Shown here piece by piece: positions 13,535 to 43,846 of a stretch of DNA of 64,000 nucleotides. The notes under the pieces are model-generated. The model had not been told where the DNA came from and searched no databases. It saw only the letters and a program-made list of their open reading frames with translations. This DNA comes from Phallusia mammillata (taxonomy: Eukaryota). Numbering within the stretch: position 1 is the first letter of the stretch; each line of letters starts with the position of its first letter. Location: positions 25,048,001-25,112,000 of the forward strand of contig OZ281495.1 in assembly GCA_965637545.1 (NCBI GenBank). Reading direction: 5' to 3'. A program made the translations under genes and the position numbers.

Positions 13535-15893
13535 ATGAATTCAACTAATTCTTCTGTCGGGATTCAAAATGCAACAACAACAACCCCATTTTTTCCGTCC
13601 GCAACTAACCGAATCCAAAGTTTTGTCATAGCCTTCGTATCAACAGCTCCTACACCTGAATTCTTTCCCATCTCCTTTGAACCCATCATTGTTAACGAGC
13701 CTATTGGACTTCCTGCATTACAGCTAGTAACTTCAACAACAGCCGTGCAAAACATTACCCAACCTTTGTCACCGCCACCACCACCACCACTACCACCACC
13801 ACCTACAGCAGGATTTATCTTTAACTTTGTAGTGCCACCAAGCCCCACCACCTCGATGTCCAGAAGTTCAAGTGTCAACACAACCGAAGGGAATATTTTC
13901 CCGTCAAACAACGCCACGTCGGCTTTCGGAGGTTTTGGTAATGAATTTCCAATAAACTTTTCGACACCTGATATTGCGGCGTTCTTACCCAACTTTTTGA
14001 TACCGAACAACACAATGACAATACTGAACAACACAATGACAGCGGAAAATGTAACCAACTCTACTGCAGTCGTGGTCGACCGAGCTCTGTTCGGCTTCCC
14101 AGCGTTTTGTTCAAGCTCAGCACCAAAGGACTGTTTTGACGTCCCGCTTAACCAGTGTTCAGCGTGTAATATGGCCAGTGCCGGTTTCTTTGCATTTATA
14201 ATTGCTCTTTTGGCACTTGCGATTATCTCTAGCAACTTGCTGGTGATGTACCTCTTTGCAAAAGACAAGTCGACGTTTACAGGAAGTTATGGAAGGATCA
14301 AAGCCTCGTTAGCGTTTACGGATATGCTTACGGGTAGGCTATTAATTACTACGTACAAAACCATTTAATATAGATTATCGCAAATTTTTACTACAAGTAT
14401 TTAAAATCGTGAGCGATGTTGTTTTCTGTAGCAGCACAATTACATTTGTTTAACATCGTTGAATTATATTTTCCAAGGTATTGTTTTACTTGCTGTTACT
14501 CTTCCCAACTTCTCATGGACGATCGCATCCACCGCCCAACAAGTCCTCCTCAACGCGATCGCACTCCAAGGATCACCCCAGGCTTCTGCTGGAGGAGTAC
14601 TTTACATCCTCATCTATACCGCATCTCTATACCACCTGGTGTTTCTCGGACAGCAACGTTTGTACGCGATCAAATGGCCGATATCATACAAACAACAACC
14701 TCAATACAACGTCTATACCGGACTCGCAGTGGTTTGGGTTATTGCCCTTCTCTGCGCCGTTGCTCCACGTAAGTGTGTTCAATATATGGCAATTCAAATG
14801 TGTTACATTGAAAACATTGTATTTGCTTCTCTAGTTTGGTTTCCCGATGACCTCGTCTTTGGTTATCAGCATCTGACCTTTCTGTTTAACCTGACTCTGG
14901 CCAAACTCAGTGTGTCGCCCGATTTAAGCCCTCTGATCGCAATGGTCGTGGTGGTTTTTATTGTTCCATATCTTATCATGGTAAGTAATAAATTGCATGA
15001 GAACATTGTCAGGACGTCAGTATTTATCAAGCACGTTTATTTAGACTGTTCTCACGGTGGTAACGGGATTTTACGTGTCAGAACACATGACAAAGTCCAG
15101 CAAGATCAAGTCAACATCCGCTGCCAGAAACCGAGAAGTAATGGTGTTTGCCACCATGGCTGCCATGCAATTGGGATTTACCATAACGTTGGGTAAGTGT
15201 GAGCAACATTACGACTAAATCATTAACGAGGCTACATTAAGCAGACGTATTACTTATTAGGGAATCTTTTTTGTTTCAGTTCCTCTTGTTGTTGTTGTTG
15301 TCTTGAGTTATACAGGAAGTCTGAATACCACAAACATTGCTGCCCCATATGTTGTTTGCTTCTACCTCTCCATGACTAACAGGTAAGCGAACATGTCCTA
15401 AAAGGGTACACCGGATTTAACCTGTACTACAAAGTGGTGACTGACGGATGCTTGTTTACCATCAAATGCTAAAAATATGTTTCAAAAAAGAGCAACCGAC
15501 GATTGAAGTCAGTTTTAGTTTTTATTTCCAAAACTGAAATATTATTCTCGCCTAGTTAAAAGGCCCTTTCTTGCTCTACCATATTTAAATACAGCAGATA
15601 TTAAAAAAAGTTTGCATATAATTTATAAATAAGGCTTACGGTATTAATGGATAAGGTTTTAAAACAAATGTAACCATATGCATTCTTTTTGCAGCCTTGT
15701 AAACGTTCTGGTGTACAGCGTTGTGGACAAAAAGTTTCGAAAGTCGGTGCGACAACTCTTTATTTCATGTTGTCCCCAATTTGTGCGGGAACGAATGGAA
15801 TCAACAGCGGCAACTGGACACAAAACTCACAGCACCGCACCGTCGAGCAAAGCAAACTACAGCAAATCATCTTCGCACGTCGAAGCTGTGTAG
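13535..15893 (+). CDS. Orphan class A GPCR, copy 1 (mucin-like N-terminus)
   Basis: Approximate exons 13535-14333, 14479-14768, 14834-14980, 15045-15192, 15280-15382, 15694-15893. Seven hydrophobic segments with TM1 SN, TM2 SLAFTD, TM3 GQQRLYAI, TM4 W, TM5 VPY and TM7 NSLVNVLVY, followed by DKKFRK helix 8. Confidence 0.9.
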
Positions 15894-16238
15894 CTGGTTG
15901 CGACAAAAGTCAAATGAGAACCAAATTGAAAGTTTGCATTTCTGCGATAAAGTTGTTCCGGAAATATTACATTACAACTGTAAATGTTTTTGTATTAATG
16001 AAATGTATGTGAAGCATTGCACAACCGTTTTTGGTCGAACGCAAAATGACATGGCTAGAATTTACTAATGACGTCAACTCCAATGAGAAGTTGGCACGAG
16101 ACACACCACGGCTATTCTAAGTGAATTATAATATTAATGAAAATTTTGCCGAAGTTTTTACATAATGCCGCTAGTCAGAGGTATGACGTAACTTGTCAAC
16201 GTTTGGGCCAACCCAGTGCTTATGCTGTTGGTATAGGG

Positions 16239-16586
16239 CAGTGGTTCCCAACCTTTCGTGGACCATGGCCCCCTTAAAGTACCTTTTTGGCCTTGTGGCC
16301 CCCTTCAAGTTACCTTGCAGAACCTGTGGCCCCCTTAAAATGTAGATAGCAATTACGTGTTGGAATGGGGTGTTAATTTTGGCCCTAAACAGGTCTAATA
16401 GAGTAAATGAGCGTGATAAACCTCACTATAAACAAATAGAATGTGAAATAGTCGATTAAATTCGGAAATAAAGGTAAAGTGAAAATGACTTTTAGTGAGT
16501 GTTTCTTGTGAATCTACGCCCGTGGCCCCCCAGAACACAGCTCGTGGCTCCCCTGGGGGGCCATGGGCCCTGGTTGGGAACCACTG
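16239..16586. mobile_element. hAT (Charlie-like) MITE
   Basis: TIRs CAGTGGTTCCCAACC / GGTTGGGAACCACTG; perfect 8-bp TSD GTATAGGG. Confidence 0.92.
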
Positions 16587-17334
16587 GTATAGGGTGAAAT
16601 AATGGATGATTAGACCAGTCTTCAAATATACTGTACCTTAAAACTGGTGTGATATATTGCACAATAATTTATCAGCCACGTATTTTCACTTTCGCAGTCG
16701 GTTTTATGTAATTTTGCTGATTTGAAAAAAAAAATCGACGTTGAGGCAATGCAGACGGTTTTGATTTAACGAACCCCTAGTAATTTGTTATTTTGATGCA
16801 AATCTTTGGAAAATCCACTTCTATACATTGTGTTGGACGATGGTAATTTGCATTTAGTACCGAGTATATGGCAAAACCATGTGTGATCACAATAAAGGTC
16901 ACAACATGAGTTTAGCCATTCACTGTTTCTATATTCCCGGCAACTAATCTCATGTTTGCATCTGCTTGCTTTTGTCATGTAAAAAGTTAAACGCCTGCAT
17001 GTTGTTGTGATATGTTGTGACAGCTTTATAATAGGGTGTAGCTGCAGCCGGTTTGGTCATGATCCACCGACTGTGCCCTCCACTGTTTTGCGCTTCATAA
17101 AGTTTCAACGTTGCGAAGCTATTTCCGGCTTGGTGATTGTTCAGTGTCATTGTGTCGTTATGTTGTCGTTCACCAAGCGAAATAAACTCAACTCATCCAT
17201 ATTGGCAATCAGGACAAGATTTACCGGTATACAAAAATGTTAGATGTAGTGTTCAATAACGTTCTTGTTCAATCCATGCCAAGACATACGGTGGCCCACA
17301 AGTGCAATTCAACAACTTTTTGGCTGACATTAAT

Positions 17335-17470
17335 TTTTTTCAGTGCAAACATTTTTTTTTATGCAAACATTTTTTTTCAGTGCAAACATTTTTTTTTCAG
17401 TGCAAACATTTTTTTTTCGATGCAAACAATTTTTTTTCAGTGCAAACATTTTTTTTTCAGTGCCAAAAAA
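17335..17470 (+). repeat. ~20-bp minisatellite, left arm (~7 units)
   Basis: Repeated TTTTTTTCAGTGCAAACA. Confidence 0.9.
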
Positions 17471-19135: not shown

Positions 19136-19284
19136 CACTAAGCCATCGCTTAGCACACTTGGCCCGGACAAGGTCTGATTACATCCTAAGCTCCGACTGT
19201 AGGCTGCACAATGCCTACCATGTCATTTTGCAATTTTTGACACGCCGTGTAAGTCCTAGGTGATGAAGCCATAAATGTTTGCTC

Positions 19285-19692
19285 AAAAAAAGTTTGCAAC
19301 AAAAAAAAATTTTTGCACTGAAAAAAAAAAGTTTGTACTGAAAAATAAATGTTTGCACTGAAATAAAAATATTTGCACTGAAAAATAAATGTTTGCATCA
19401 AAAAATAAATGTTTGCATCGAAAAATAAATGTTTGCACTGAAATAAAAATGTTTGCACTGAAAAATAAATGTTTGCACTGAAAAATAAATGTTTGCACCG
19501 AAAAATAAATGTTTGCACTGAAAAATAAATGTTTGCACCGAAAAATAAATGTTTGCACTGAAATAAAAATGTTTGCACTGAAAAATAAATGTTTGCACTG
19601 AAAAATAAATGTTTGCACCGAAAAATAAATGTTTGCACTGAAAAATAAATGTTTGCACCGAAAAATAAATGTTTGCACTGAAAAATAAATGT
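19285..19692 (-). repeat. 20-bp minisatellite, right arm (~20 units) with 120-bp higher-order duplication
   Basis: Unit AAAAATAAATGTTTGCACTG. 19441-19560 is identical to 19561-19680, including the variant units. Confidence 0.95.
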
Positions 19693-20863: not shown

Positions 20864-23635
20864 ATGAATTCAACTGATTCTTCCGTCACGGTTCAAAATG
20901 CGACAAAAGTCGACAAGTTTTTCACGGACGAAATGACTGCTGAAGGTGACGTAAAGTTCATCCAACATTTTCAACCAGTAACTCCTGCATTTCCACAAAA
21001 CTTTCGTACAATGCCTATTGCTGGCACCGAGTCAGTTGTCGTTTCTGCCGCTCCCGTTGTACGACTAGTTTCCATGACAACGGTACAAAACAAGTTTTTG
21101 GGGGCCCTGGCTTCTATACCGCAACTTCCATCTGTGGAAGGGTTTACCGTCAACTTTACAAATCCCCACACTCCAGTGTCCTCAAATTCAAGTATGGAAA
21201 CGACCTCCGGAAGCGTCGAATTATCAAGTAAAGACACAACCGCTGCTGGGACATTTGAAACGGAGTTCGATTCGTTCATACCTAACTTCTTTTTTCTGCC
21301 AAACGGCACAATGAATGCAGCCGATATAGACAACTCTTCATCAACCGTGATCGATAGAGCTTTGTTCGGTTTTCCAGCTTTTTGTTCAAGCTCAGCACCA
21401 AAGGACTGTTTTGACGTTCCGCTCAACCAGTGCTCAGCGTGTAACATGGTCGGGGCTAGTTTCTTTGCATTTGTGATAGCGCTACTAGCGTTTGTCATCA
21501 TATTTAGCAACATGCTGGTTATGTATCTGTTGTCAAGAGACAAATCGACTTTTACAGGAAGTTATGGAAGAATCAAAGCGTCGTTAGCTTTTACGGATAT
21601 GCTTACGGGTAGGCTATTAACTATCATGTACATACTGATTTGAAAAGTAATATTTATTTTCATGGATTATTTTTCCAAGGTATTGTTTTACTTGCTGTTA
21701 CTCTTCCAAACTTCTCATGGACGATCACATCCACAGCCCAGCAAGTCCTCCTGAATGCAATCGCACTTCAAGGATCACCACAGGCTTCTGCTGGAGGAGT
21801 ACTATACATCATCATCTATACAGCATCTCTATACCATCTGGTGTTTCTCGGACAGCAACGTTTGTACGCGATCAAATGGCCAATATCATACAAACAACAA
21901 TCGGTCCATAACGTATACATAGGTCTTGCAATAGTTTGGATCGTTGCCCTTCTTTGTGCCGTTGCACCACGTAAGTTGTGTTTTTAAGTTTTCGGATTTG
22001 TGTTTTTAAGCCCTTAAGGCAATAGTTTTCAACCTGTTACGTATACTACTACATAGTGGTACGCCGGGGTTTTTGGATGGTACGCAGGCAACTTTATGTA
22101 AGTCTTCATGACAGAAAATTGCAAACCAACTGAACAGCCCTGGTTTTGGGTGCTTCGGGCATTCTTTTGAAATTGTAATCCTAGTAGTTTTATAAATATA
22201 CTAACCCAGTCTATCAGAACTGACCTATCTCTTAGTCTACCCATCAAAACAAGGTTTAGGTACGCAGCGATAAAAAGTCTTCAGGTGGTATCCGATCATT
22301 AAGAGGTTGAGAACCACTGCCTTACAGAAAAGTTTCTCAAAATGTTTCGTCTTATTTATGTCTTGGCAGCCTTCGAAGATAAAATTTACCCTAATCCTTA
22401 CAAAACAGTGCCAGAAAAAAAAAACTGTTACACAAACAAACGTGTAAACGAAAGACCTGGAGAAAAGAATAAGATGCCAAAATAATCTTCGTTGTTTTTG
22501 TTATCCTATAGTTTGGTTTCCCAATGACCTTGTCTTCGGTTATCAGCATCTGACCTTTCTGTTCAACCTGACGTTGGCCAAACTCAAGTCTTCACCTGAT
22601 TACGGTCCTTTGGTCGCGATGGTGGTGGTGGTTTTTATTATTCCGTTTCTTATCATGGTAAATTAACAAATAATACAGAAATTTTGTGTCAGAATGTAAG
22701 TCATTTTAAGTTTATTTTTCTTTTTAGACCATTCTTGCGGTGGTAACAGGCTTTTACGTGTCAGAACACATGACAAAGTCCAGCAAGATCCAATCAACAT
22801 CAACTGACAAAAACCAAGAAGTAATGGCGTTTGCCACCATGGCTGTTATGCAATTGGGATTTACAATAACCTTGGGTAAGTTTGGAAACTGTTTTGCCAT
22901 AGACCAGGGATGTCCAAAGTGCGGCCCGCGGGACAAATGCGGGCCCCAGTGGCTGTTGTTTCAAATTGTGTTACGTATTGACCGCCATAGTTTGGATTAC
23001 GTTTTTGGGTTGTGGCGAGTTATTTACCAGGGGAAAGAAAGTGTACATGGTGCTGACGCAACAAAATCCCACAATTTCCTTAAATCCGGTATATTTGTGT
23101 TCTAGTTCTAAAAAAACGTTGGCCAGCGGGAGTCTTTACCAGGTAAAAATTGGCCTCCATTAAAAAATGTTTGGACACCCCTGCCATAGACCAAGCACAG
23201 GGCTATTTTTAGCTTCCGTATAGCTAATAAGCAATGTTATTATTTATTCCAGTTCCTATGGTAGTGGTTGTTGTCTCCAGTTATACAGGAAGCTTGAATC
23301 CCAGCAACATTGCAATTCCATATGTTGTATGCTTCTATCTCTCTATGTCTAACAGGTATAGATGTTAGTATAAATTATGTACGAAAAATACATAAACTTT
23401 TAATATAAACATGAAAAATTATTTTCTAATGATAAACATTTTTGGCAGCTTGGTAAACGTTCTGGTGTACAGCGTTATGGACAAGAGGTTTCGAAAAGCA
23501 GTAATGGAACTTTTCTGTTCACACTGCACTAACAATTTAAGCGTAAAAAGAGAATCAACATCGGGACACAAAACTCCGAAAAGCATAGAGCCATCGAGGA
23601 AAGCAAACTTCAACAAATCGTCATCGCATGTCTAA
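20864..23635 (+). CDS. Orphan class A GPCR, copy 2 (mucin-like N-terminus)
   Basis: Same 6-exon structure (approx. 20864-21608, 21680-21970, 22512-22657, 22728-22875, 23253-23355, 23449-23635). Closest paralog of copy 1. Confidence 0.9.
22020..22319. mobile_element. hAT-type MITE in intron 2 of GPCR copy 2
   Basis: TIRs CAATAGTTTTCAACC / GGTTGAGAACCACTG; TSD CCTTAAGG / CCTTACAG. Confidence 0.75.
22905..23183. mobile_element. hAT-type MITE in intron 4 of GPCR copy 2
   Basis: TIRs CAGGGATGTCCAAA / TTTGGACACCCCTG; perfect TSD CCATAGAC. Confidence 0.9.
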
Positions 23636-23852
23636 ACTGTGCGGCTGGTCGTAAACACAATACAACTAAAAAAACAAACTTTATATGTTTGCCACTAATG
23701 TATGTCGATGTTTATGAATTGTAAATGTGTTCATAAAAATGAGATACTGTATTCAAATATTTGTGGTCCATTGGCATGTTTCTCGTTTTACACGTTAACG
23801 TGTAACAATTGTTGCGCGCATGGAGTTTATGTCATGAAAATTAAGTTATAAT

Positions 23853-26914: not shown

Positions 26915-29900
26915 ATGGCTAGATTTCCAATGGAAGTACCATTTTCACTACCATCAGTACAAAAACCAGGGTTTGTCAACAATTTGGTTACTAAGATGCC
27001 AGTTACTCTACCTATAAAAGAAACTCTAGCCCCAAATCATCCGACAACTACTTTGGCGACAACGACAATGACAAGCCTACGACCACCAACCTTTGCATTG
27101 ACAACAACCAATAAGCCGAGTCCAAGCCTACAAACTTTTGCATTAACGACTGCCGCAACAAGCAGTCCAAACCCAGCGACTTTTACATTGGGAACTACGA
27201 CAACAATGAACCCAAACCCAACAACTTTTACATTGGCGACTCCGACGACAACAGCAAGCTTAAGTCCATCAACTTTTACCATGGAATCTCCGACACCAAC
27301 GACGCCTAAAACTGCAGCCTTTGTAGTCAATTTTATCACCTCAACTTTGCCCATAGCTCCTTCACCTCCGCCAGTAAACAGCACTACAACAGCAAACTTT
27401 TTCTCAACAACAGCAACTCAAACCTCTACACATTCTGTTGTCGGATCTCTGGCGTTAAACGGGTTTCCAGCGTTTTGTTCCCAGTCGGTCGTCGACAGTT
27501 GTTCGAACACATCAGTGAAGGATTGTGGTCAGTGCAGCATGGTTGGAGCTGGGCTCTTTGGATTTTTTGTTGTTTTTCTGGCCTTGGCTATAATCATAGC
27601 AAATTTTCTGGTGATTTGGCTCTTCCTAAAGGAAAAATCAATGTTTACTGGAAGCTACAGAAAGATCAAGGCATCTCTAGCCGTTGCAGATTTGCTTACA
27701 GGTGACTACGTAATAATTGTAACAGACAAAAACAAACAAATCTGGTTAATTTCCACCTGTTAATAGCACTTTTTGTTTAGTTGCGTGAGTATTGTGATTT
27801 TGTGAACCCAAAAAATTTGTAAGAAAAACAGGGCAAATGGGTATGCGGTTTACTGGATCTGTATTGGCATTTAATCAATAGAAAACTCTAAACAATTAGG
27901 TTCTTAATTGCCCCAAAAGCATTCTCAAATTCTATTTTGTTTGCTTTCATTTGTTGCCCTGGTTTCAAACCAAAGCTTTGAACAGGTCCCGGTGACTTTA
28001 GTTGTTTGGCATGGGTATCCATTACCTATAATTGTATCTACTTTTCTTTTTAAAGGAATTTTACTTTTCGCTGTGGCTCTCCCCAACTTTCTATACACGA
28101 TCAACTCAACTCCTGACGAGCTTCTTCTATATACTATTTCGCTGCAGCATTCCCCTTTAGCCATTGCTGGAGGAGTGTTTTACATTCTCATCTACACCTC
28201 ATCACTGTACCATCTGGTCTTCCTCGGTCAACAACGTCTATTTGCCGTCCGTTGGCCTATTCGGTATAAGCATCAGGCTGACTTCAACGTCTACATTGGT
28301 TTGGCTGTCGTTTGGGTTCTGTCCGTTTTGTGTGCCTTTGCTCCATGTAAGTTTCAGTACAATTACCAACTCAAGTCCTTTAAACATCTAAACATACGTT
28401 TTATATTGCAGTGTGGTTTCCGGGTGTATTTGAGTTTGGTTACCAACACATGATATTCCTCTTCAACCTAACACTTTCCGCCACGAGGACAGAAACCATT
28501 TACACGCCCTTGGTTATCATGGTCGTTGTTGTATTTATTCTACCCTATCTATTAATGGTAAGTTTCAGTATACCCAAACTAGTTTTTGCTTAGCCGGTCG
28601 ATACATCAAAATTGTAGCAGGATGTATCAAACATGTAACACGTTTATACAAAACATGACATGATATCTAACATGACATGTCCTATAATACTTAGTTCCGA
28701 CGCCAGGGCAGCTATAAATAATAAAGCATCCGTGCGTTGTGCTGATTTTACTTTGTTTTTACGCACATTTTTCGTTCCAACACACACCATAGACTCTTCC
28801 ATAGACTCTGCTCTTCAACCTTTTTTGGTTTGGTGAACCCTTAAATGTGTTGTAACGAACTCATGCACCCTGTTTACCTAACTGAGGACAAAAACGACAT
28901 GAAAAATGGCGTGAGCTGTTTGGTCTCGACGTACATTAACGGGCAGCCGCACTTTTGATCAAAAACTTTTGACGTAAATTTGCACCCATGTATACCTTTT
29001 CGTACTGATGCACCCCAGGCATATTTTGGTGCACCCCAGGGTGTACACACCGGTTGAAGAGCACTGCCATAGACTAAAGTTGTCGAAATTAATTATTTTA
29101 TTAATTCATAATATACCCTGCACTATACAAGAATCGGTTCATAAGTTTAATGAGAATAATAACGGCCCAAACTGATGTAAAAGGCGACATGCTTTGTTAT
29201 TTAAACTTTTCGGTAAATGCGCATGCCTTCATCAGTGATATGGGGGACCGCGGCCACTGATTGATAAATGATGTAAGCATATGCCGAAATGTTTAATAAA
29301 CCATGTCGCTTTTTCTTACCATTTGGGACGTTATATTTTCCTCATTAAATAATATACCTCTTCTTGAAATATTTTTAAAATTTCTTTAAAAATTATACAA
29401 ACGCACTTAAAATAAGAGGTTTGTTTGCAGAGTGCATTTACCGCTGCCACTGGTTTCTATGTCTCGAAACATCTCCGAAAATCCGCAAAGTTTACAACTA
29501 ATAATTCTGAGAGCAAAAAAGAGTTGGTGGTTTTTGCAACGATGGCTATAATGCAACTTGGGTTTACTATCACATTGGGTAAGATTACAAAACAGTCCTT
29601 TTTTGGTAGAAAATCTTGTTTAAGTCTTGTGTAAAGCAACAAACGAATCAAATTAAAAGTTGATTATTATTTTGTTACCTTATTGAGTTCGAATAAATGT
29701 GTTTACACCAAACTAATCCAACGAAATGTTAACTAGGTTTTACAAAATTTGTTTTGAGTAACAAGGACGAAATTATTTTGTTATGTTTTAGTTCCCCTTG
29801 TTGTGGTTGTGATCATGAGCTACACCGGGGACCTAAACAGCACCAACATTTCAACTCCATATATTACATGTTTCTACCTTTCAATGACTAACAGGTTTGT

Positions 29901-30144
29901 GTATAAAGTAAAAAGTCTTGGATCATTGCATGCGGTTGCAATCAAACCTATTTGTTTTAACAGCTTGGTGAATGTCTTCGTGTACAGTGCGGTCGATTCA
30001 ACCTTCAGAAAATCGGTCGGAGAACTTTTCTGTGCCTGCTGCCCAAGCAAACTAAAGTCGCCACCTCCATCAACAAAAAGCAAACACACGGCCTTATCCA
30101 AAAACACCAAGAGTCAAACTAAGTCGCAAACAGATTCAGTATGA
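26915..30144 (+). CDS. Orphan class A GPCR, copy 3 (Thr/Pro repeat N-terminus)
   Basis: Approximate exons 26915-27701, 28056-28346, 28412-28557, 29431-29578, 29792-29894, 29964-30144. ATG 26915 was chosen because a splice acceptor at ~26881 precedes it. Motifs SLAVAD, GQQRLFAV, NSLVNVFVY. Confidence 0.88.
28807..29066. mobile_element. hAT-type MITE in intron 3 of GPCR copy 3
   Basis: TIRs (TC)TGCTCTTCAACC / GGTTGAAGAGCACTG; TSD CCATAGAC on both sides; left end damaged by a local 12-bp duplication. Confidence 0.8.
29129..29365. mobile_element. Degenerate fold-back (palindromic) MITE
   Basis: TTTAATGAG..ATAACGGCCCAAA..GCGACATG..TTTCGG..ATCAGTG is mirrored by CACTGAT..CCGAAA..CATGTCGC..TTTGGGACGTTAT..CTCATTAAA. 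Confidence 0.75.
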
Positions 30145-33597: not shown

Positions 33598-36408
33598 ATG
33601 AATCATACTTTGCCTCCGTTGCCTCCGCCGTTACCACCCTATCCATGGGAGCTATTTCCTGCGCCTCCAGTTTCAAACTTTATAGCAGACCGCTACGTGA
33701 ATGTGAGCAATCCTAACGTTTCGCATGTGTGTGGAGTTTTACCGTTTTGCAATCCTTCAGCGGTTTCTACATGTGTCGACGTACAGTTGTCAAAGTGCCC
33801 GGATTGTAACACAGCCACAGCCGGAGTTTTTGTGTTTTGTATTGTTTTTCTGGGTCTTTCCATTTTTCTATCTAACGGTTTCGTGATATTTTGCACGATC
33901 ATGAAACGACCGGGCTTTACTGGGCATTACAGCGCTATCAAAGCATCACTGGCCGGTTGTGATATACTAACAGGTCAGTAAACATACCACGTTTATATTT
34001 TCTTCGGTTAAAGAGTTTAAAGTAAAAAAATCGAACCAAATGTAAAATAAGCTTCTAGCTATACTTTCAGCGTAGTTTGGAATTTTCCAAAAGTTAAGTT
34101 TAAAAACATATTTTTTAAAACTAACAAACGGCTGAAACTTTCAACTAAAATTGATCTGTATCACATGGTTCAGGACGATTTTATGCACAAGCACACATTT
34201 CATCTCGAAAACCTGTGCCACGAATATTGATTTATTTTCAGGCATCCAGCTGTTAGTAGTTGTCGTTTACAACTTCAGTTGGTCGATCAACGTCACAGCT
34301 TCAGAGCTTGACCAGCAACATTTAGCATTGCGTGGAAGCATAGGCGCAGTGCTTGCGGGAATGTTGTATCTTATTGGCTTCTCGGCATCACTAAATCACC
34401 TCATATTGATGGGACAACAACGCTTGTATGCCATCTCACAGCCGATCAACTACAAACGCCAAAGCAAGCGCATCGTATACCTTGGTATCACTTTGGCGTG
34501 GTTGTTAGCAGTATTGCCGGCTACGATTCCAAGTAAGTTGATATTTTTCATTTAGCAAGTTATGAAATTTCCAGTTTGGAAACCATTCTTAAAGCTATAT
34601 ACCTGGCCTCCTCAAGAGTTGTTAGCGGGTCCGAAATTCGAGCTCGAATCCGAAAGTTTTAGCCCGAAGCCCGACCCTCAATTAATCGGTTTTGAGAAGC
34701 CCGTGTAGGCACGAAGGTTTGATTGACAGGCCTATATAAATAAATAAAAAACACAAATACAATGGACAATGGCACAAAATAGACGTTTTCGGACTGATAA
34801 GCATTATCTCCAGCAACCAGCTACGTAGGCAAGTAATTTATATTTAAGAAAATTACTAACAAAGAATGTAAAGTCAGGCCAGAATCAAGCCCGTTCGTTA
34901 AAGACACCAAGCCCGAACCCGACCCGAAAAAACCGGCCCGACTAACAACCCTAAATGTTTTTCGTGGTTTTACATTTTTAACCGAATTATAAAAGTAATT
35001 ATCATTGCAGTGTGGTTTCCCGATGTCTTCGTCTTTACCTATTCAACGCCTATCTTCATCTACAGCATTTCGATCAAACCGATCTCAGTCACGTCGTTCA
35101 ATTCCTTACCTCTCATACTGCTGTTCGTCGTCATTTACATGGTTCCGTTTCTGATTATGGTACGTCTGGGTAAACGAAAGCTTATTCTACGATTCCTTGT
35201 TGTAAGTTTAAACGATGTTTCCTGTATCAGTTTAATTGTTAGGTATGCATGCTTTCGCACATATTATTATTGTTTTTGTTTTTTTAACTTTATTGCTATC
35301 AGTCGGGTTTCATTAGGATGTTAGCAATTACTCCTGAGGAGCTGCGCTCTCTGCTAATAACCTAAAATACATTTAAGTTACAGCAACAAACTTGTGTGTT
35401 ATACTTTGTCACCATTTTCTCCTCAGACCACGATCAGCGTCGTAACAGTAGTAGTTGTGAAGAAAAAAGTAATAGCAAAATGGAGAGAACTGCGACAAAG
35501 TGACCAGAAAAAAGAAATGGCGATTTTTACGACTCTGGCAATCATGCAAATCGGGTTCACTGTAACTTTACGTAAGTGATTTTAATAATGCTTAAACATT
35601 AAAATTAAATTTTACGAGACGTTTTTGTTTCAGTGCCCATCTTGGTAGTTGTATGTCTCACATATTCTTCACATTTGAACTGTCACAATTTATCTGTGCC
35701 TTATTCTATCTGCTTCTACCTGAGCACTTCAAACAGGTCAGTTTACCAGATTCAAGTCAGGTTCCACTTTATTCATTTCCAATGTTTTGTCATCAAGTCT
35801 ACCAAGGTTTCAAAAACCCATGTTCTCGTGTGTGAGGTCAACTAAATGCATTAAGTATTCTTGTGCTCTGAAGTAAATTGTAGGCTAGAATGTTTAGTTT
35901 GCAGCTAAGGACAAGTAAGCTAAAGTGAGTGTGCACATTACAACTGGTGGCATTGGCCGTGTATTGGCTTGTAGAGCCACCTTACGGCACAAAGTATTGG
36001 GAATAACAGGTTGAAACACATCACTGAATATGTTGGATGTCACATCTAGCCTAGGGGTAGTTCCACAATGACCAAGCAACAGCTTGGAAACCAAAGTGGT
36101 GTCGGCTCAGAATTCTACAATTTTTTTGTCCGTGTATGTCAACACAGTATTTCTTACTTTCTTGTATAATTCTAATATTCTTTTAATAATAATTTGAAAC
36201 CAATCTTAGCATTTGCTTTTGTAGCTTTGTGAACGTGCTGACGTACAGCGCCCGGGACTCCGATTTCCGAAAAGCAGTTGTCCATTACTTTTCGCTTTGT
36301 TGCCACAAGAAGAACAAGACCACAGAAACAAACAGTTTAAAAACAACTCACCACAATCATGTCAGTCTCGAAAGCATTGAAAATCATCATACAACCACGA
36401 AAACATAA
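33598..36408 (+). CDS. Orphan class A GPCR, copy 4 (short N-terminus)
   Basis: Approximate exons 33598-33973, 34242-34532, 35011-35159, 35427-35571, 35634-35736, 36225-36408. Motifs SLAGCD, GQQRLYAI, NSFVNVLTY. Confidence 0.88.
34614..34953. mobile_element. Diverged MITE in intron 2 of GPCR copy 4
   Basis: AGAGTTGTTAGCGGGTCCG ... CCGGCCCGACTAACAACCCTA, with internal GCCCG repeats. No clear TSD. Confidence 0.6.
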
Positions 36409-36926
36409 AAACAGGAGTTATTGAAGGGTTTTAATTGTCGCCAAATCCTATCTCACAATGTTTTTAGTCAAGCAGAGTAATATTTCCTAATGACTTGTGT
36501 TAAAAAAACCCTTTATTATTGTACCAATCAAGTGTTTTTCAGTTTTTTCGCAAACTAGAACATCATAGCATATAAAAAACATAACTGTGTGTATTGGCGT
36601 GCTTCAGTACTACATGTCCAAGGACTTACCTCAACTTTACGTAGTGTTTGTGGGCTGGGATCAACAGCTATTGCTTTTTTCAACACTATTGTGATCAGTT
36701 TAGTTACAGAGGAGGAAATTGTTTGTTCTTCCTACGCATCAACGGACACGTTTTGTTACCCACATTCGCGCTACTTCGCAGGAAGCAAATGAACTGCGCT
36801 GTGTTAAAACAACCAAGGTTTAGTTTAGTTTTATTGCGAGGTAAATGAGTAGTCGACTTCTTTCGATTTATTAAACATTTTGGAGTTTATGTTTATAACC
36901 TAAAAAGGTTTAGAAAAGGTTTAGAA

Positions 36927-37208
36927 CAGCGGTTCCCAAACTGGGATCCGTGGACCAAATGGGGTCCGTACAGCAGTTTCAGAGGGTCCGCAATGTACAT
37001 TACCGATTGTATTTCGATAATAAAGCTTTCCAGGGTGTAGTGCTTGCTTTATAACTTATTACGTAGTCTTTGTTAGCGAATTTGTTTTTTCTTTTATTGG
37101 TGTGATTTTTGCATTTTTCCTTCTTTAATTTTTATAGGGCCGCGAAATATCAGAATAATTGCAAAGGGTCCACCAGGCAAATTTTTTAGAAAAGTTTGGG
37201 AACCGCTG
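36927..37208. mobile_element. hAT-type MITE immediately upstream of GPCR copy 5
   Basis: Perfect TIRs CAGCGGTTCCCAAACT / AGTTTGGGAACCGCTG; perfect TSD GTTTAGAA. Confidence 0.92.
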
Positions 37209-37290
37209 GTTTAGAATCAACATTTAAAAGAAGGTAGAATAAATATTTGTAACAAATTTCTGTGTAGTGCAGCATAGCTCAAAAAGTACC

Positions 37291-39213
37291 ATGAATTTGC
37301 CTTTGAAGCAAATCCCGCAGTTTGATCCAACGTCCTTCGTTCAAGACCGCTTTACCATCCCCGGCCATACAAATGTGTCATACATGTGCGGAGTATTACC
37401 CTTCTGCACTAACACAGCAGTTTTCACATGCCGTAACATCACGATATCACAGTGCAAGGATTGCAGCACCGTAGGAGCCGTTTTTTTTTCTGTTTGCTGT
37501 GGTAGTTTTAGGTCTCCTCATTTTCCTCGGCAATGGTTTTGTTATTTCCTGCACTTTTATGAAACGGCCGGGTTTCACAGGACATTACAACCTCATCAGG
37601 GCGTCACTGGCAGGAGCCGATCTTCTAACAGGTAGGCCTAAGTGTAAAAAGTTTATCGTGCACGAGGCTGTTCTTTCCAAGGTCGCACAAGTGCCATTTT
37701 GTGACAGTGAATTAACATCATAACTTTACATACTGTTCTATCCCTATTTTTCTGGTTACCTTACAAGTAATAAATATTTACAAGAAATTTTTAAACTTAA
37801 ATTCCCACAATAACTGTCAATTGCTCTTGGGCACTTAAAAGTCTAAAAATCATACCGTTTTTTTACTTGCACTTACAGGCATCCAGCTTCTGGTATTGGC
37901 TGTATACAATGTGAGTTGTTCGCTAAACGTCACATCTACACAACTCGATCAACGTCAACTCGCCTTGCGAGGAAGTACTACGGCAATATTCGGGGGCATG
38001 TTGTATATTATTGGCTTTTCAGCATCGCTTAATCACTTGATATTAATGGGACAACAGCGACTCTTTGCCATCGTGCAGCCAATAGCATACCATCACCAAG
38101 GCTTGCGTACGGTATATGTTTTGATCGCGGTGGCGTAAGTTTAAGACTATTATAGATTTCTTCCAAAAAGGAAATTACTCCAAAAATACTAAAACTTATA
38201 GATAATAGGGCGGAATTTTGTATAAAAGGGCGGATAACGCTCAAAGTCAACAAAAAATATTTGCTGTAGTATGTTTTTTATAATTACTTTCATAATATGC
38301 TATTGGCTGTACCTCTCATGAACTTTAATGAGAAGATATTACATTCTCACTGGTGCCGAAACAAACTACACGTCTACATTTTTTGTTCCATGTAGGCTAT
38401 TACTCCCTTATTTTGTAAGATTTTTGCTAATGTCCTTTATTTTCAGTGTGGTTTCCAAACAGCTTGGTCTTTACCTATTTCACGCCAATTTTCATCTTTG
38501 GCGTTTCCTATAAGACGTCTGCCGGTTTATACCATCTTCTTTTACTCTATATCATCATGTACATATTTCCATTTCTGGTGATGGTGAGTACACAGACTTA
38601 AAAAATCTCAATGAGAGAACAACATTGTCGCTTTAGACATCAATAAGCATTGGAACAGTGATTGTCGTAAAGAAAAAAGTCGTAAAGAAATGGACAGAAA
38701 GGCAACGTGCTGACCACAAACGGGAAGTTGCAATATTCAAAACTCTTGCCATCATGCAAATTGGCTTTACTCTTTCGTTGTGTAAGTTTGTTGTTTTGTC
38801 AGAGTTTTATAGGGGAAAAATCTACTTATTGCTTACCATCAAGCGGATTGTGTTTATTATACTCCGATTTTGAAATTTTTCAACAATCAAACCAGCTATT
38901 GAATCTGGCAAAACTAGTACGTACATTTTTTTGGCACAGTGCCCATCCCGGTTGTGGTATTCTTGATCTACAGTGGAATACTTAGTTGTCACCACCACTC
39001 GGTGCCCTATGCAGTTTGCTTCTATGTGAGCACGACAAACAGGTTTGTGAATGATTCTCCAAAATATGTGCATTTACTCTTAGGTAATAGGCTCCTACAA
39101 AACTCCAAATTAACTCTTTTCATCCCAGCTTTGTGAATGTGCTTATCTTTAGCACAAGAGAGCCAACTTTTCGCAAGGCCTTCGTCTACTACTTTCCAAT
39201 ATGCCAACGATGA
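37291..39213 (+). pseudogene. Orphan class A GPCR, copy 5, probable pseudogene
   Basis: +1 frameshift in a T9 run (37481-37489) in TM1. Exon 2 lacks ~35 nt of TM4 relative to copy 4, ending GTGGC|gtaagt at 38134 with a phase mismatch to exon 3. Remaining exons are open. Confidence 0.75.
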
Positions 39214-40690: not shown

Positions 40691-41049
40691 ATTGCCCCCC
40701 AATTTACCCCCCCAGATCCCTAAAACGGGTAATTTGTTTTCAACAATATTTGAGTAGAATGAAATTAAGACAGTAGGCTATGTATAATAGGCCATTTATA
40801 GGTGTCAATTGTGGTGATTCACACTATATTCCTACCATTTAGCCTTAAGTCTTTTAAATTTGGTCAAACTTGTAACAATGTCCGAATTACATTAGATTTG
40901 GACAGTTTGTACTTTGCACAATACGACTAAGGAATATGAAATTCATTATTTACATTTTCTGCCTGCAGAAACAAATCAAGGTTATAAAAATGCCAGCTAA
41001 TATGGGACCCAACATAAAATAAGCATAGGGAATATATTATTGTTTTTAA

Positions 41050-41240
41050 ATAGGTCATAGTGTATATGCAATGGCAAAATGAGCCAAACCACCCTTCTTT
41101 TTTGAGAGAGTCCCAAAATACCGCACTGGACACCTACTCGACCACGTTTTTTTTCACGGGATTCGAACCCAGGACTCTCCTTAGAACATTGTTCTAGATT
41201 GCAGCACTTGTACGCCACCAAGCGGTTGACCGACAGCACC
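41050..41240 (-). mobile_element. tRNA-derived SINE
   Basis: Minus strand GGAGAGTCCTGGGTTCGAATCCCGTGAAAAAAA (B-box), shared with the element at 47695. Confidence 0.6.
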
Positions 41241-42222
41241 TGACAATTTTTAAGTGTCAAACACTCGATGCACCAAAGTTATTTATTAGTATTAGCATGC
41301 TGGAAATTTGACATTTTTTGGGTTGGTTAAAAAGGGTATCAAAAGTAATTCAGCCCTTAAAAAATATACCTACATATAAAGTAGCGAGACGGTTTGTTCA
41401 CTCATGCCATAATTAGCGATGTTGTTGCAAAAAATTTGATCTCTGTTTTTTTAAGCAGTATTAATCGAATGTTTAAAGTTATCTGTGCGGTTTCTTCCGG
41501 TTAAAAAGTCAGTCGCTGTAAAATGTTTACGCAACACGTTAAAAACTTTTTTCCAGAAATTAACAATAAGTTTATGCATGGAGTTGCATGGCGCAATTAC
41601 GTAGCCTAATTAGCTGTGTTGTTTCGGCTAAATATGTTACAATCATCTATTCCTATTGGATCAGAACTTTTATTAATATGAGAGGTCGCTAATAGTTTTT
41701 GTAAATTTTGAACGTTAAGTACATAACCAAAGTTTTAGGGAGTTTTTCATCGAGTTCACGTTTTGGTTGCATTTTTGTCGTTCGGTACATGCATATTCCT
41801 GGTTAAGTTATAAGCCTACGTAATCTTTTGACTAGTGGTCGTTTAACTACACGGAGCTGTTTACATCGATATAAGTACTTCTGACAAATGATGGACGGTG
41901 GTTGGGGCCGAAAATTTTGCGGAAGTGATCAATAACATGGCATAAACCAACAGCTGTGCTATACAAGCAAACGACAAAACAGTGTTTTGCTTCAACTTTG
42001 CAGACAAGGTACAAAACATTTACTTGGTAAAGATAAAAAAAAAACAGAGAGTGAAGTCTTGTTGTGGATTAAAACACGAATGTTGTTTGCCTGCTGGATG
42101 GTAAAACAGCTATAAGTATTTGACTTTTTCGCATGAACTTGGAGGATTTCTGCAGATTTGTGTAAGAGATTGATATCTTGTAGGTGTTTGCAAAAAAACA
42201 ACATTGTGACCATTCATTTGCA

Positions 42223-43846
42223 ATGAGTGGAACCCCTGTAACATATCAAAATGTTAACCAGACTACTTATCAGACTTTTCCTGGTAAATTAACCAGCGCA
42301 CCCAATATTACCGACCCAACAGCATTGTGTGGGGTCCCTCCATTCTGTGATAAATCTGCAGTCACGGGATGCTCCAAGATAGTATTGTCAGCATGCAACA
42401 GTTGTAACATGGTAGGAGCAGCATTGTTCATTACCATGGTTATCTTGCTTGCTGTGGCAGTCTTACTCTCCAACGGATTTGTGATATTTTGTTCGGTTAC
42501 CACGAAACCGGGATTCACAGGCCAATACGGAATAATCAAAGCATCACTGGCGGTGGCCGACTTTCTTTCAGGTAAGCAGAAGGAATTATGCCCAAATGGT
42601 CGGTGCTAAAATGTAGTTTAAACCTTACCTGAAACTAATCGTTGGCTTTGTGCTAGGTATCCAATTGCTAGTGATCGTCGTCTACAATTTTACCTGGTCC
42701 ATAAACGTTAGTGCAAGTGAACTCGGACGCCGGGCATACAACCTTCGTGGTTCAACCGAGGCAACACTTGGAGGAATCTTCTATTTGTTCTGCTTTGTTT
42801 CGTCGCTCCACCATCTAATATTAATGAGTCAGCAACGCCTGTATGCTATCGGCTGGCCAATTAAATACAAGTTTCAGAAACAACAAACTATTTACATCCT
42901 ACTTGCGGTTGTGTGGATAACTGCTATAACCACATCATCAGCCCCAGGTAAAAATTCATAAACGTGCTTAGCTAATCGTCAGCAAACCTGGTAATGTGAA
43001 ACTTTCATAAGTTACAAGAATGTTCTTTTTTCAGTTTGGTTTCCACACAATCTTACATTTGTGTATGTGGTTCCGGCATTTCTCTTCAATTTGTCGACAA
43101 GTAAAAACTACCAATCCCTGATGCACGTCTTTTTTACCATTTACGTATTGCCTTTCCTTCTCATGGTACGTTTGATAGCAGCTTCATCTTGGGCAGAAAA
43201 TATTATGGGGTTAAATGTCTTTTTAAGTAATTTTACACTTAATTTTTTCACACATTTTGGTTGATATTGTGATGCTGTGTTTTACCCAAGACATCAGCGT
43301 CGCAAAAATTTGATAAGCGATATACAAGACTTACAACAAACCAAGCTATGCCTTCGTTCTGCAGACGCTGATGTCAATAACAACAGCCCTGGTGGTAAGG
43401 TTTAAGTTGGCGAAAAAGTGGAAGGAACTAAGAGACGACAGAAAACGCGAAGTTTCAATATTTGTTTCTGTGGCTTTGATGCAATTCGGATTTACTATTA
43501 CACTCTGTAAGGACAAAAGTAAACAAACATATTCTACATGTGAAAAACATACTTGCATTTTGCAGTACCCATTGTCGTGTTGATTCTGCTTACATATACT
43601 GGAGCCATTTCTTGCAACAACTTATCACTGCCGTTCGCCGTTTGCTTTTATTGCAGCATGTCCAACAGGTGCGGCGTAAATTTGAAAATAAAGCACAAAA
43701 TAATAACTTAACTTACTTTGTATTTTAGCCTGGTCAACGTTGTTGTATATAGCTTTCGCGATGAGAAGTTCCGCGAGGCGATTGTCAATTACCTTTCCTG
43801 GTTGTGCAAGACAAGAAAAAAAGAAATGAGTCATCACACAAACTGA
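42223..43846 (+). CDS. Orphan class A GPCR, copy 6 (short N-terminus)
   Basis: Approximate exons 42223-42571, 42657-42947, 43035-43166, 43365-43506, 43566-43668, 43729-43846. Motifs SLAVAD, SQQRLYAI, NSLVNVVVY. Confidence 0.88.

What the first reader, a model, noticed from the sequence alone, without database searches (positions are those of the whole stretch)
13535..43846. Six-gene tandem family of atypical class A GPCRs with an unrecognised extracellular Cys module and rewired activation motifs
Seen: all six genes share six coding exons and a juxtamembrane module G-x-x-x-F-C-x7-C-x7-C-x2-C directly before TM1 (e.g. GFPAFCSSSAPKDCFDVPLNQCSACNM). DRY is replaced by QRL in all six, NPxxY by NVxxY (NVLIF in copy 5), and CWxP by FT(I/V/L)(T/S)LxP. 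Position 3.25 is Ala/Thr rather than Cys, and ECL2 has no Cys. Known: these motifs are the class A activation switches, and the TM3-ECL2 disulfide is missing mainly in melanocortin, S1P/LPA and cannabinoid receptors. Inference: this is a lineage-expanded orphan family, possibly chemosensory or lipid-sensing, in which the N-terminal module caps the ligand pocket. I do not recognise the module as a named domain.
Basis: partly seen in the sequence, partly recalled or inferred. Interest (0 to 1): 0.8.

Follow-up and report, generated by a model that had tools for sequence, protein, structure and literature searches.

The report
Sea-squirt orphan receptors with cysteine cap
The window holds six neighbouring genes (five intact, one damaged) from a large sea-squirt-only family of rhodopsin-type cell-surface receptors that carry a small cysteine-rich cap in place of the usual stabilising bond; the receptors look functional, but what they detect is unknown.

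Summary
Six + strand paralogues lie at 13535-43846, all built on the same six-exon plan. Each has the pre-TM1 module G-x3-F-C-x7-C-x7-C-x2-C (6 strict matches in the window, 0 in 100 shuffles). Each has QRL for DRY, NVxxY for NPxxY (NVLIF in copy 5) and FTxTLxP for CWxP, with no Cys at 3.25 or in ECL2.

Corrections:
- Copy 5 is broken in this assembly: a T9-run frameshift in exon 1 and a 35-nt loss at the end of exon 2. Other DNA runs carry different lesions.
- This is not a six-gene family. The genome, Phallusia mammillata, has at least 63 exon-2 copies in several clusters. All 30 named relatives I looked up are ascidian (Ciona, Clavelina, Styela, Phallusia).
- The six genes form two separate triplets.

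Evidence of function: copy 4 is spliced as modelled in an RNA-like run, and dN/dS is 0.14-0.18.

The module matches no Pfam family. A Ciona member was listed in 2008 only under unclassified 'Other Rhodopsins'. This scan flagged the same family twice before on other DNA of this genome.

Most of the class A signalling core is kept (D2.50, R3.50, E6.30, N7.49, Y7.53), so G-protein signalling is likely. The ligand, the capping role of the module and the family's place within class A remain open.

The parts
13535..15893 (+). Copy 1, intact, 561 aa. Exons 13535-14333, 14478-14768, 14835-14980, 15045-15192, 15280-15382, 15695-15893. QRL codons at 14654-14662.
   Evidence: open model, all GT-AG; 45% identity over 392 aa to P0006; exon HMM hits.
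20864..23635 (+). Copy 2, intact, 539 aa. Exons 20864-21608, 21680-21970, 22512-22657, 22728-22875, 23253-23355, 23449-23635.
   Evidence: dN/dS against copy 1 is 0.18 over module+7TM+tail and 0.52 over the N-terminal ectodomain.
26915..30144 (+). Copy 3, intact, 551 aa from the Met at 26915. The frame is open from 26756, with further in-frame Met codons at 26792 and 26828, so the start is uncertain. Exons 26915-27701, 28056-28346, 28412-28557, 29431-29578, 29792-29894, 29964-30144.
   Evidence: The Thr/Pro-rich N-terminus contains a 45-nt coding repeat at 27156-27251.
33598..36408 (+). Copy 4, intact, 415 aa. Exons 33598-33973, 34242-34532, 35011-35159, 35427-35571, 35634-35736, 36225-36408.
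   Evidence: Contigs of run X1 skip exactly 35159|35427, 35571|35634 and 35736|36225 (GT..AG). The DNA runs X2 and X3 do not show these joints.
37291..39213 (+). Copy 5, damaged in this assembly. Exon homologues 37291-37631, 37879-38134, 38447-38583, 38637-38781, 38940-39042, 39129-39213. TM7 reads NVLIF.
   Evidence: Historical dN/dS against copy 4 is 0.14.
42223..43846 (+). Copy 6, intact, 377 aa. Exons 42223-42571, 42657-42947, 43035-43165, 43365-43506, 43566-43668, 43729-43846.
14093..14167 (+). Cys module of copy 1 (G-x3-F-C-x7-C-x7-C-x2-C), directly before TM1. The other five lie at 21368-21442, 27461-27535, 33733-33807, 37390-37464 and 42331-42405.
   Evidence: 6 matches, 0 in 100 shuffles; alignment A2; no Pfam match.
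37482..37490 (+). T9 homopolymer in exon 1 of copy 5 that shifts the frame inside TM1.
   Evidence: contigs of DNA runs X2 and X3 both have one base fewer at 37481, which restores the frame.
38134..38136 (+). Junction of a 35-nt loss at the 3' end of copy 5 exon 2 (second half of TM4).
   Evidence: the X3 contig carries 32 extra letters between 38136 and 38134, giving a 291-nt in-phase exon 2. The X2 contig matches the window. X3 instead lacks 2 nt at 38970, in exon 5.

Best explanation
The locus is a tandem array from a tunicate-restricted, strongly expanded subfamily of rhodopsin-type (class A) G-protein-coupled receptors in Phallusia mammillata. The array consists of two triplets, each made by local duplication: copies 1-3 and copies 4-6. 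Five genes are intact and under purifying selection. Copy 5 is decaying, with different disabling lesions in different haplotypes.

Shown here:
- The six-exon plan and the seven-helix class A fold, the latter through close homologues.
- A conserved 4-Cys module immediately before TM1.
- Loss of the canonical TM3-ECL2 disulfide.
- In most family members (here copies 4-6), a fifth Cys just before the module that is present or absent together with a lone ECL3 Cys.

Inferred mechanism: the module, pinned by two internal disulfides and in most members by a third to ECL3, packs with a conserved ECL1 helix and an aromatic ECL2 hairpin (AWFP..F.F.Y....FLF.P). Together they would form a fixed lid that takes over the structural role of the missing disulfide. 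The variable N-terminal ectodomain would do the ligand recognition and pass it through the lid. That ectodomain is short, mucin-like, or built of Sushi repeats in Clavelina relatives. Signalling would go to G proteins through the retained core (D2.50, S3.39, R3.50, E6.30, F6.44, P6.50, N7.45, S7.46, N7.49, Y7.53). Q3.49 is the neutral form of the usual acid and probably raises basal activity. Birth-and-death evolution in tandem arrays points to environment-facing or cell-surface recognition, not to a housekeeping hormone system. My confidence in the identity is about 0.9 and in the mechanism about 0.35.
For: - Gene models and motifs.
- Class A membership: exon 2 hits 7tm_1 at E 3e-6 to 1e-4. 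Full-length homologues at 35-45% identity hit 7tm_1 at E 1e-15 to 1e-19 over the whole profile. A PDB profile search gives A2A and beta-adrenergic receptors at E about 1e-21. The AlphaFold model of P0006 has pLDDT 84 and pTM 0.80. Structural matches reach Z 27 to 5-HT2A and beta1AR.
- Family size and range: at least 63 exon-2 copies and 67 module hits in the genome. There are 86 cluster representatives at E<1e-10, and all 30 named ones are ascidian.
- Species: locus L025 is identical to P. mammillata CAB3265839.1.
- Two triplets: tree, with SH-aLRT 95-100.
- Selection: dN/dS 0.18 and 0.14.
- Transcription and splicing of copy 4.
- Cys co-occurrence.
- Conserved ECL1 and ECL2 framework and retained microswitches.
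- Sushi-bearing relatives carry the same module and keep E3.49.
- In two divergent clusters an extra intron sits right after the module's last Cys, which marks the module as a discrete unit.
Against: No ligand, tissue or signalling data exist for any member. The lid and the disulfide pattern rest on conservation, co-occurrence and model confidence only; no coordinates could be inspected. The Cys co-occurrence may reflect only one or two loss events, because copies 1-3, L025/P0006 and L026 form one clade. TM2, TM3 and TM7 are the most conserved parts and Y3.32 is invariant. That would also fit a shared small ligand, or a self-activating receptor, instead of ectodomain-based diversity. P7.50V, loss of W6.48 and loss of Y5.58 could impair normal activation. 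RNA support is two low-depth contigs for one gene, from a run whose RNA nature is only a guess.
Confidence: 0.55

Rival explanations
1. They are receptors for tunicate-specific neuropeptides or peptide hormones, like the deorphanised Ciona-only class A clades (Ci-LF, Ci-YFV and Ci-NTLP receptors). The cap would form part of a peptide pocket.
For: Shiraishi et al. 2019 (PMC6475428) showed that urochordate-only class A clades can be nanomolar peptide receptors. The Ci-LF receptors in that study are 21-26% identical to cannabinoid, adenosine and adrenergic receptors. The same neighbours head my PDB list.
Against: At least 63 copies in one genome, with birth-and-death turnover, is far more than the known peptide sets. 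Mucin-like and Sushi ectodomains are unusual for short-peptide receptors. An earlier, unchecked scan note (s1-361530) says the Ci-LF receptor family is a different one with a 12-Cys ectodomain. The published receptor sequences are not held, so I could not test identity.
Confidence: 0.2
2. They are lipid or other membrane-entering-ligand receptors akin to the S1P/LPA/cannabinoid/melanocortin group. Those receptors also lack the TM3-ECL2 disulfide and close the pocket with an N-terminal cap.
For: There is no Cys at 3.25 or in ECL2. The extracellular framework is conserved and ordered. CB1 and LPA2 are among the PDB profile hits. Some members are auto-named LPA-receptor-like.
Against: Adenosine and aminergic receptors score at least as well. 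Automatic names are scattered over ten unrelated receptor types. The Cys-knot cap is unlike the helical caps of S1P1, LPA1 and CB1 (my own knowledge of those structures). No lipid-binding residues were identified.
Confidence: 0.15
3. By descent they are LGR-type (relaxin/glycoprotein-hormone receptor-like) receptors that lost their leucine-rich repeats. The module would be a remnant of the pre-TM1 hinge and might act as a tethered internal agonist.
For: Protein-language-model features place P0006 nearest to GRL101-like, TSHR, FSHR, RXFP1 and LGR4 clusters (0.88-0.92, with 181-199 shared features). NCBI names several members 'relaxin receptor 2'. The FSHR alignment runs through the module region (8i2h, model residues 40-381). 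The same genome holds LRR-less, LDLa-bearing relaxin-receptor-like receptors (Kamesh 2008; scan note s1-399072).
Against: The family HMM scores an LRR-bearing receptor at 78 bits against about 105 bits for D2-like receptors. No LGR appears among the 60 best PDB profile hits. Kamesh 2008 put the Ciona member outside the LGR-like cluster, with GPR50 as best human hit at 1e-6. No LRR or LDLa domain is found. The FSHR Z-score of 26.0 is tied with many others.
Confidence: 0.15
4. They are constitutively active or ligand-independent receptors, or decoys. The Q3.49, V7.50 and non-Trp 6.48 changes would have replaced agonist gating.
For: Q at 3.49 mimics the protonated acid. From established work on rhodopsin E134Q and adrenergic D3.49N mutants (my own knowledge), that change raises basal activity. 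The pocket-facing helices are highly conserved across paralogues.
Against: R3.50, E6.30, the sodium-site residues and N7.49/Y7.53 are kept, so normal gating remains possible. Fast-evolving ectodomains suggest ligand-driven diversification.
Confidence: 0.1

Closest known systems
Ciona 'Other Rhodopsins' of Kamesh et al. 2008 (e.g. ci0100154142; NCBI XP_026690068 'relaxin receptor 2')
   Same: Same family. ci0100154142 has the CGFPSFC... module, GQRL, MQIGFTVTLVP and NVLVY. Its current NCBI form, P0008, clusters with the window genes.
   Different: It was only listed as unclassifiable, with GPR50 as best human hit at 1e-6. Neither the module, the motif set, the family size nor the Sushi-fused relatives were described.
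Aminergic and adenosine receptors (class A alpha group: beta1/beta2AR, 5-HT2, D1, A2A, A1)
   Same: These are the best sequence-profile and structural matches (E about 1e-21; Z about 27, rmsd 2.4-3.0 A over about 275 residues). Shared features are D2.50, R3.50, E6.30, W4.50, P5.50, F6.44, P6.50, N7.49 and Y7.53.
   Different: Identity is only 17-20%. The family has no D3.32 (Tyr instead), no C3.25-ECL2 disulfide, Q3.49, V7.50 and no W6.48. It also has a Cys module and a multi-exon gene.
Lipid and melanocortin receptors (S1P/LPA, cannabinoid, MC)
   Same: They lack the TM3-ECL2 disulfide and have an N-terminal element over the pocket. They appear among the profile hits.
   Different: They are not closer than other alpha-group receptors. 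The DRY, NPxxY and CWxP replacements are not shared (the comparison of the cap and of these motif sets rests on my own knowledge of those receptors).
LGR-type receptors (RXFP1/2, FSHR/TSHR, GRL101) and ascidian LDLa-GPCRs
   Same: A large or variable ectodomain is joined to a class A core through a Cys-containing pre-TM1 segment. They are the nearest clusters by language-model features, and automatic names point the same way.
   Different: No LRR or LDLa domains are present. HMM scores are lower than for amine receptors. GPHRs keep ERW, NPxxY and the TM3-ECL2 disulfide (my own knowledge).
Ciona-specific neuropeptide receptors (Ci-LF-R, Ci-YFV-R; Shiraishi et al. 2019)
   Same: They are tunicate-only class A clades with similar distant neighbours.
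   Different: Identity with this family is untested, because the sequences are not held. An earlier scan note assigns Ci-LF-R to another family with a 12-Cys ectodomain.

Membership tests
Class A (rhodopsin-like) GPCR, Pfam PF00001 7tm_1 | Match to the 7tm_1 profile above its gathering score | tested here: met
   Full-length P. mammillata, Ciona and Clavelina homologues score 56-70 bits against a cut-off of 30.5, covering profile positions 1-260. They are 35-45% identical to the window models over their whole length, and P0006 is a paralogue from the same genome. Window exon 2 alone scores 22-27 bits, below the cut-off as expected for a fragment. The joined window models were not sent to Pfam.
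Class A (rhodopsin-like) GPCR, Pfam PF00001 7tm_1 | Seven-helix fold superposable on solved class A receptors | tested here: met
   The model of P0006 has pLDDT 84.3 and pTM 0.80. Z is 26-27.7 and rmsd 2.4-3.0 A to 5-HT2A, beta1AR and alpha1A.
Class A (rhodopsin-like) GPCR, Pfam PF00001 7tm_1 | Reference residues N1.50, D2.50, R3.50, W4.50, P5.50, P6.50, N7.49, Y7.53 | tested here: met
   All are present in copies 1-4 and 6. Copy 5 has F at 7.53 and, as assembled, lacks the W4.50 half of TM4.
Class A (rhodopsin-like) GPCR, Pfam PF00001 7tm_1 | Canonical D/E-R-Y, N-P-xx-Y and C-W-x-P motifs and the C3.25-ECL2 disulfide | tested here: not met
   The copies have QRL, NVxxY and T-L-x-P, with Ala at 3.25 and no Cys in ECL2. 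These features are typical of the class but not required for membership.
Ascidian 'cysteine-cap' rhodopsin family (Kamesh 2008 'Other Rhodopsins' member ci0100154142; scan notes s1-399122 and s1-347122) | Pre-TM1 module C-x7-C-x7-C-x2-C together with Q/E-R-L/F, MQxGFTxTxxP and N-V/F-xx-Y | tested here: met
   All six copies have these features. The same features occur in ci0100154142 and in 29 aligned relatives.
LGR / relaxin-receptor type | Leucine-rich-repeat (and, for RXFP, LDLa) ectodomain | tested here: not met
   No Pfam domain is found in exon 1 of copies 1, 4 and 6. Homologues show 7tm_1 only. Some relatives carry Sushi repeats instead.
LGR / relaxin-receptor type | 7TM core closer to LGRs than to other class A groups | tested here: inconclusive
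   Language-model features say yes. HMM scores and PDB ranking say no. No rooted class-A-wide tree was made.
S1P/LPA/cannabinoid/melanocortin (MECA) cluster | Phylogenetic grouping with these receptors | tested here: inconclusive
   CB1 and LPA2 are hits, but they rank below adenosine and aminergic receptors. The lack of the TM3-ECL2 disulfide is shared.
Urochordate Ci-LF / Ci-YFV peptide receptor clades | Sequence membership in the published clades | not testable with these tools
   The supplementary sequences of PMC6475428 are not held, and the main text gives no accession numbers.
Adhesion GPCR (class B2) | GAIN/GPS domain and a 7tm_2 core | tested here: not met
   Only 7tm_1 is found, even in the Sushi-bearing relatives.

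The most novel reading that the evidence does not exclude
The cysteine-cap family is the missing environment-facing (chemosensory, settlement-cue or self/non-self) receptor repertoire of ascidians, which lack vertebrate-type odorant receptors. In this reading the conserved GFPxFC cap acts as a built-in gate or tethered agonist. Binding to the variable mucin-like or Sushi ectodomain would move the cap, giving a class A analogue of LGR or adhesion-GPCR activation.
Probability: 0.15. Interest if true: 0.8.

Novelty: new variant of a known kind. Interest (0 to 1): 0.5.

Why it matters
Tunicates are the closest relatives of vertebrates, yet they lack the vertebrate odorant and purine receptor groups (Kamesh 2008). 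Their larval chemoreceptors were still unidentified in 2026 (PMC12922724).

This family is large, fast-turning-over and tunicate-only. It keeps the class A signalling core but rebuilds the extracellular face around a small disulfide-rich cap, which makes it a concrete candidate for such functions.

It is also a natural experiment in GPCR design. The TM3-ECL2 disulfide is replaced by an N-terminal knot and an N-terminus-to-ECL3 bond. The DRY acid is naturally neutralised. The same core and cap are fused to Sushi-repeat ectodomains in another ascidian.

For annotation, it shows that the scattered automatic names are not informative. These include relaxin receptor 2, TAAR9-like, adenosine A3-like, LPA-receptor-like, octopamine-receptor-like, NPY2R-like and apelin-receptor-like.

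Tried and rejected
- A word-based protein search with the module+TM1 region of copy 3 found nothing.
- The same tool with the family alignment was swamped by generic GPCR candidates and returned only three family members. Neither search says anything about absence.
I redid it with coordinates only.
- I first read Kamesh's 'Unclassified LGR-like' group as the likely home of the family. The supplement shows the Ciona member under 'Other Rhodopsins' instead.
- I suspected identity with the Ci-LF receptors but could not test it.
- Remote hits of the exon-2 profile are a mix of ordinary class A receptors, not mainly LGRs.
The paralogue census therefore rests on 32 loci, and the regions fetched were cut to 10 kb.
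- The careful tree search did not finish, so the quick IQ-TREE tree is reported.
- 'Pseudogene cluster or chance ORFs' is rejected on three grounds: canonical splice sites in five genes, dN/dS of 0.14-0.18, spliced contigs, and orthologues in five species.
- EST tissue columns for the Ciona member were too ambiguous in the text copy to use.

Full report
**Observation**

The window is G000:C2:25048001-25112000 of a 240-Mb animal genome. Stop-free stretches on the + strand and conserved anchors gave six gene models, defined purely by coordinates.

- Copies 1, 2, 3, 4 and 6 are open, at 561, 539, 551, 415 and 377 aa. Each has five GT-AG introns at homologous positions and phases.
- Exon 2 is always 291 nt and exon 5 always 103 nt.
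- The strict module pattern occurs six times, once per gene directly before TM1, and never in 100 shuffles (alignment A2).
- QRL is invariant (A1).
- TM7 reads NVLVY, NVLVY, NVFVY, NVLTY, NVLIF and NVVVY. TM6 reads FT(I/V/L)(T/S)L(V/L)P.
- Counting back from R3.50, position 3.25 is Ala in all six. ECL1, the top of TM3 and ECL2 contain no Cys.

The joined exon models were used only inside local scripts: translation, BLAST against proteins already fetched, dN/dS and a tree. Searches were done exon by exon or through database homologues.

**Copy 5**

As assembled, copy 5 is not an open gene.

- Exon 1 shifts frame inside TM1 at a T9 run (37482-37490).
- Exon 2 stops at 38134, 35 nt short. This removes half of TM4 and leaves the wrong phase.

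Laying contigs of public runs of the same species shows the following.

- Both DNA runs, X2 and X3, have one T fewer. The frameshift is therefore an assembly error or a private allele.
- X3 has 32 extra letters at 38136/38134. These rebuild a 291-nt in-phase exon 2 with a normal TM4.
- X2 shares the deletion seen in the window.
- X3 in turn lacks 2 nt at 38970, inside exon 5.

Against copy 4 the historical dN/dS is 0.14. Copy 5 therefore looks like a recently failing gene with different lesions in different haplotypes. Logan contigs drop rare variants, so this needs genotyping.

**What the genes are**

Exon 2 alone hits Pfam 7tm_1 at E 3e-6 to 1e-4, and hits TM3-TM4 of D1, 5-HT2B and beta2 receptors in the PDB.

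An exhaustive profile search with exon 2 found 86 cluster representatives at E<1e-10. All 30 that I looked up by name are ascidian: Phallusia mammillata, Ciona intestinalis and C. savignyi, Clavelina lepadiformis and Styela clava. Their automatic names contradict each other: relaxin receptor 2, TAAR9-like, adenosine A3-like, tachykinin receptor 86C, apelin receptor-like, octopamine receptor-like, LPA receptor-like, NPY2R-like and uncharacterised.

The window models align over their whole length to these proteins at 35-45% identity. The homologues match 7tm_1 end to end at E 1e-15 to 1e-19, and nothing else.

Locus L025 of the same genome is identical to P. mammillata CAB3265839.1. This identifies the species, and earlier scan notes say the same.

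**Family size and structure**

- The exon-2 profile finds at least 63 copies at E<1e-9 in the genome. They lie in clusters on C2 (near 3.9, 4.1, 8.3, 14.2, 15.8, 25.1, 29.0, 30.0 and 30.9 Mb), C7 (24.16-24.26 Mb), C3 and C4.
- The module+TM1 profile finds 67 places.
- In the 32 loci I could fetch, the same six-exon plan recurs with the same boundaries.
- A quick maximum-likelihood tree splits the window into two triplets.
  - Copies 1 and 2 (support 100) plus copy 3 (95) are sister to L025/P0006 and L026 (99).
  - Copies 4 and 5 (99) plus copy 6 (98) are sister to L023/L024 (85).
- Ciona and Clavelina sequences mostly fall outside the Phallusia groups, so the expansions are lineage-specific.
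- Clavelina proteins of 670-1340 aa carry 1-7 Sushi repeats. They are followed by the same module (with x9-10 in the first spacer) and the same core, and they nest inside the family. They keep E at 3.49: ERL, ERV or ERI.
- In two divergent clusters an extra phase-2 intron sits immediately after the module's last Cys. The module therefore behaves as a discrete unit.

**Function-relevant features**

Kept in the intact copies and in the family consensus:
- N1.50, D2.50 in the SLAxAD motif, S3.39, R3.50 and W4.50
- P5.50, E6.30, F6.44 and P6.50
- N7.45, S7.46, N7.49, Y7.53 and the helix-8 Phe

Changed:
- D/E3.49 to Q
- Y3.51 to L or F
- Y5.58 lost
- C6.47 and W6.48 to T and L
- P7.50 to V
- the C3.25-ECL2 disulfide lost

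Y3.32 and H3.42 are invariant in the six copies.

The extracellular face is not hypervariable. ECL1 carries a conserved N..W.MN.T..EL segment, and ECL2 a conserved AWFP..F.F.Y....FLF.P.

In an AlphaFold2 model of P0006, built on a 29-sequence family alignment, the following are seen:
- Mean pLDDT is 84.3 and pTM is 0.80.
- The module, residues 51-72, has pLDDT 94-97.
- ECL1 forms a short helix.
- ECL2 forms a beta-hairpin.

Structural neighbours are ordinary class A receptors. A few alignments extend into the module: squid rhodopsin's N-terminal cap and FSHR's pre-TM1 hinge end. This places the module over the extracellular face, but I could not inspect coordinates.

Most family members, here copies 4-6, have a fifth Cys just before the module (LCG...) and a lone Cys in ECL3. 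Copies 1-3, P0006/L025 and P0050 lack both. This co-occurrence suggests an N-terminus-to-ECL3 disulfide. However, it may rest on only one or two loss events.

**Selection and expression**

- Copies 1 and 2 give dN/dS 0.18 over module+7TM+tail and 0.52 over the poorly alignable N-terminal ectodomain.
- Two contigs of run X1 skip exactly the predicted introns 3, 4 and 5 of copy 4, with GT..AG ends. The two DNA runs do not show these joints. At least copy 4 is therefore transcribed and spliced as modelled, at low depth.

**Comparison with what is known**

- The module matches no Pfam family, whether tested as part of exon 1 or alone at E<=10.
- Kamesh et al. 2008 (PMC2396169) list the Ciona member ci0100154142 among 23 'Other Rhodopsins' that fitted no subfamily. 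It has the module and all the motifs, and its best human hit is GPR50 at 1e-6. It is not in their LGR-like/LDLa cluster.
- Placement within class A is unresolved.
  - Sequence profiles and structures favour amine and adenosine-type receptors.
  - Language-model features and NCBI names favour LGR-type receptors.
- Shiraishi et al. 2019 showed that other tunicate-only class A clades are peptide receptors. I could not test whether this family is one of them. An unchecked scan note says the Ci-LF receptors belong to another family.
- This scan has already reported the same 'cysteine cap' family twice, in the C2:14.2-Mb cluster (s1-399122, s1-347122), including the Cys co-occurrence. I reached the same reading independently.

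**Verdict**

The finding is real. It is one local array of a large, tunicate-restricted, uncharacterised class A subfamily with an undescribed pre-TM1 Cys module.

- Identity is well supported.
- G-protein signalling is likely.
- The lid role is plausible.
- The ligand class is unknown.

I rate it a new variant of a known kind, with interest 0.5.

Noticed in passing
window 17334-17463 and 19301-19692: Two arrays of the same 20-nt minisatellite, with 6.7 and 19.6 copies, lie in opposite orientation in the spacer between copies 1 and 2.
   Followed up: no
window 27156-27251 (copy 3 exon 1): A 45-nt coding repeat (15 aa, Thr/Pro-rich) sits inside a long mucin-like N-terminal ectodomain. Copies 1 and 2 also have long Ser/Thr/Pro/Asn-rich N-termini, while copies 4-6 have short ones.
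   Followed up: partly
window 15870-15893, 23620-23635, 30130-30144; homologues P0006, P0004, P0003, P0020: Many family members end in a short x-(S/T/E/D)-x-(V/I) tail (for example ...EAV, ...SHV, ...DSV, ...TSV, ...TTV). This resembles PDZ-binding C-termini.
   Followed up: no
window 34680-35075 and 36849-37242: Contig depth in the DNA runs jumps from about 280 to 16,000-66,000. These are high-copy repeats in intron 2 of copy 4 and in the spacer between copies 4 and 5, with many alternative joints.
   Followed up: no
window 7141-8028, 8212-11000 (+) and 45400-50315 (-): These are the flanking genes: an ORF with a weak SNAPC2-like match, FTCD (FTCD_N, E 2e-27), and on the minus strand a large C2H2 zinc-finger gene. 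From memory it looks SALL-like; I did not test that.
   Followed up: partly
L022 3106-3440 (+) and L032 (minus strand), clusters at C2:14.23 Mb and C2:28.97 Mb: In these divergent family branches a phase-2 GT-AG intron lies directly after the module's last Cys, so the module ends an exon of its own.
   Followed up: partly
P0005, P0007, P0014, P0015, P0016, P0027 (Clavelina lepadiformis): These are class A receptors of this family with 1-7 N-terminal Sushi (CCP) repeats. They are auto-annotated as 'CUB and sushi domain-containing' or 'SVEP1', which hides the receptor part.
   Followed up: partly
L025 (G000:C2:3916001-3926000): The exon pieces are identical to Phallusia mammillata CAB3265839.1 ('relaxin receptor 2'), which identifies the genome's species.
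   Followed up: yes
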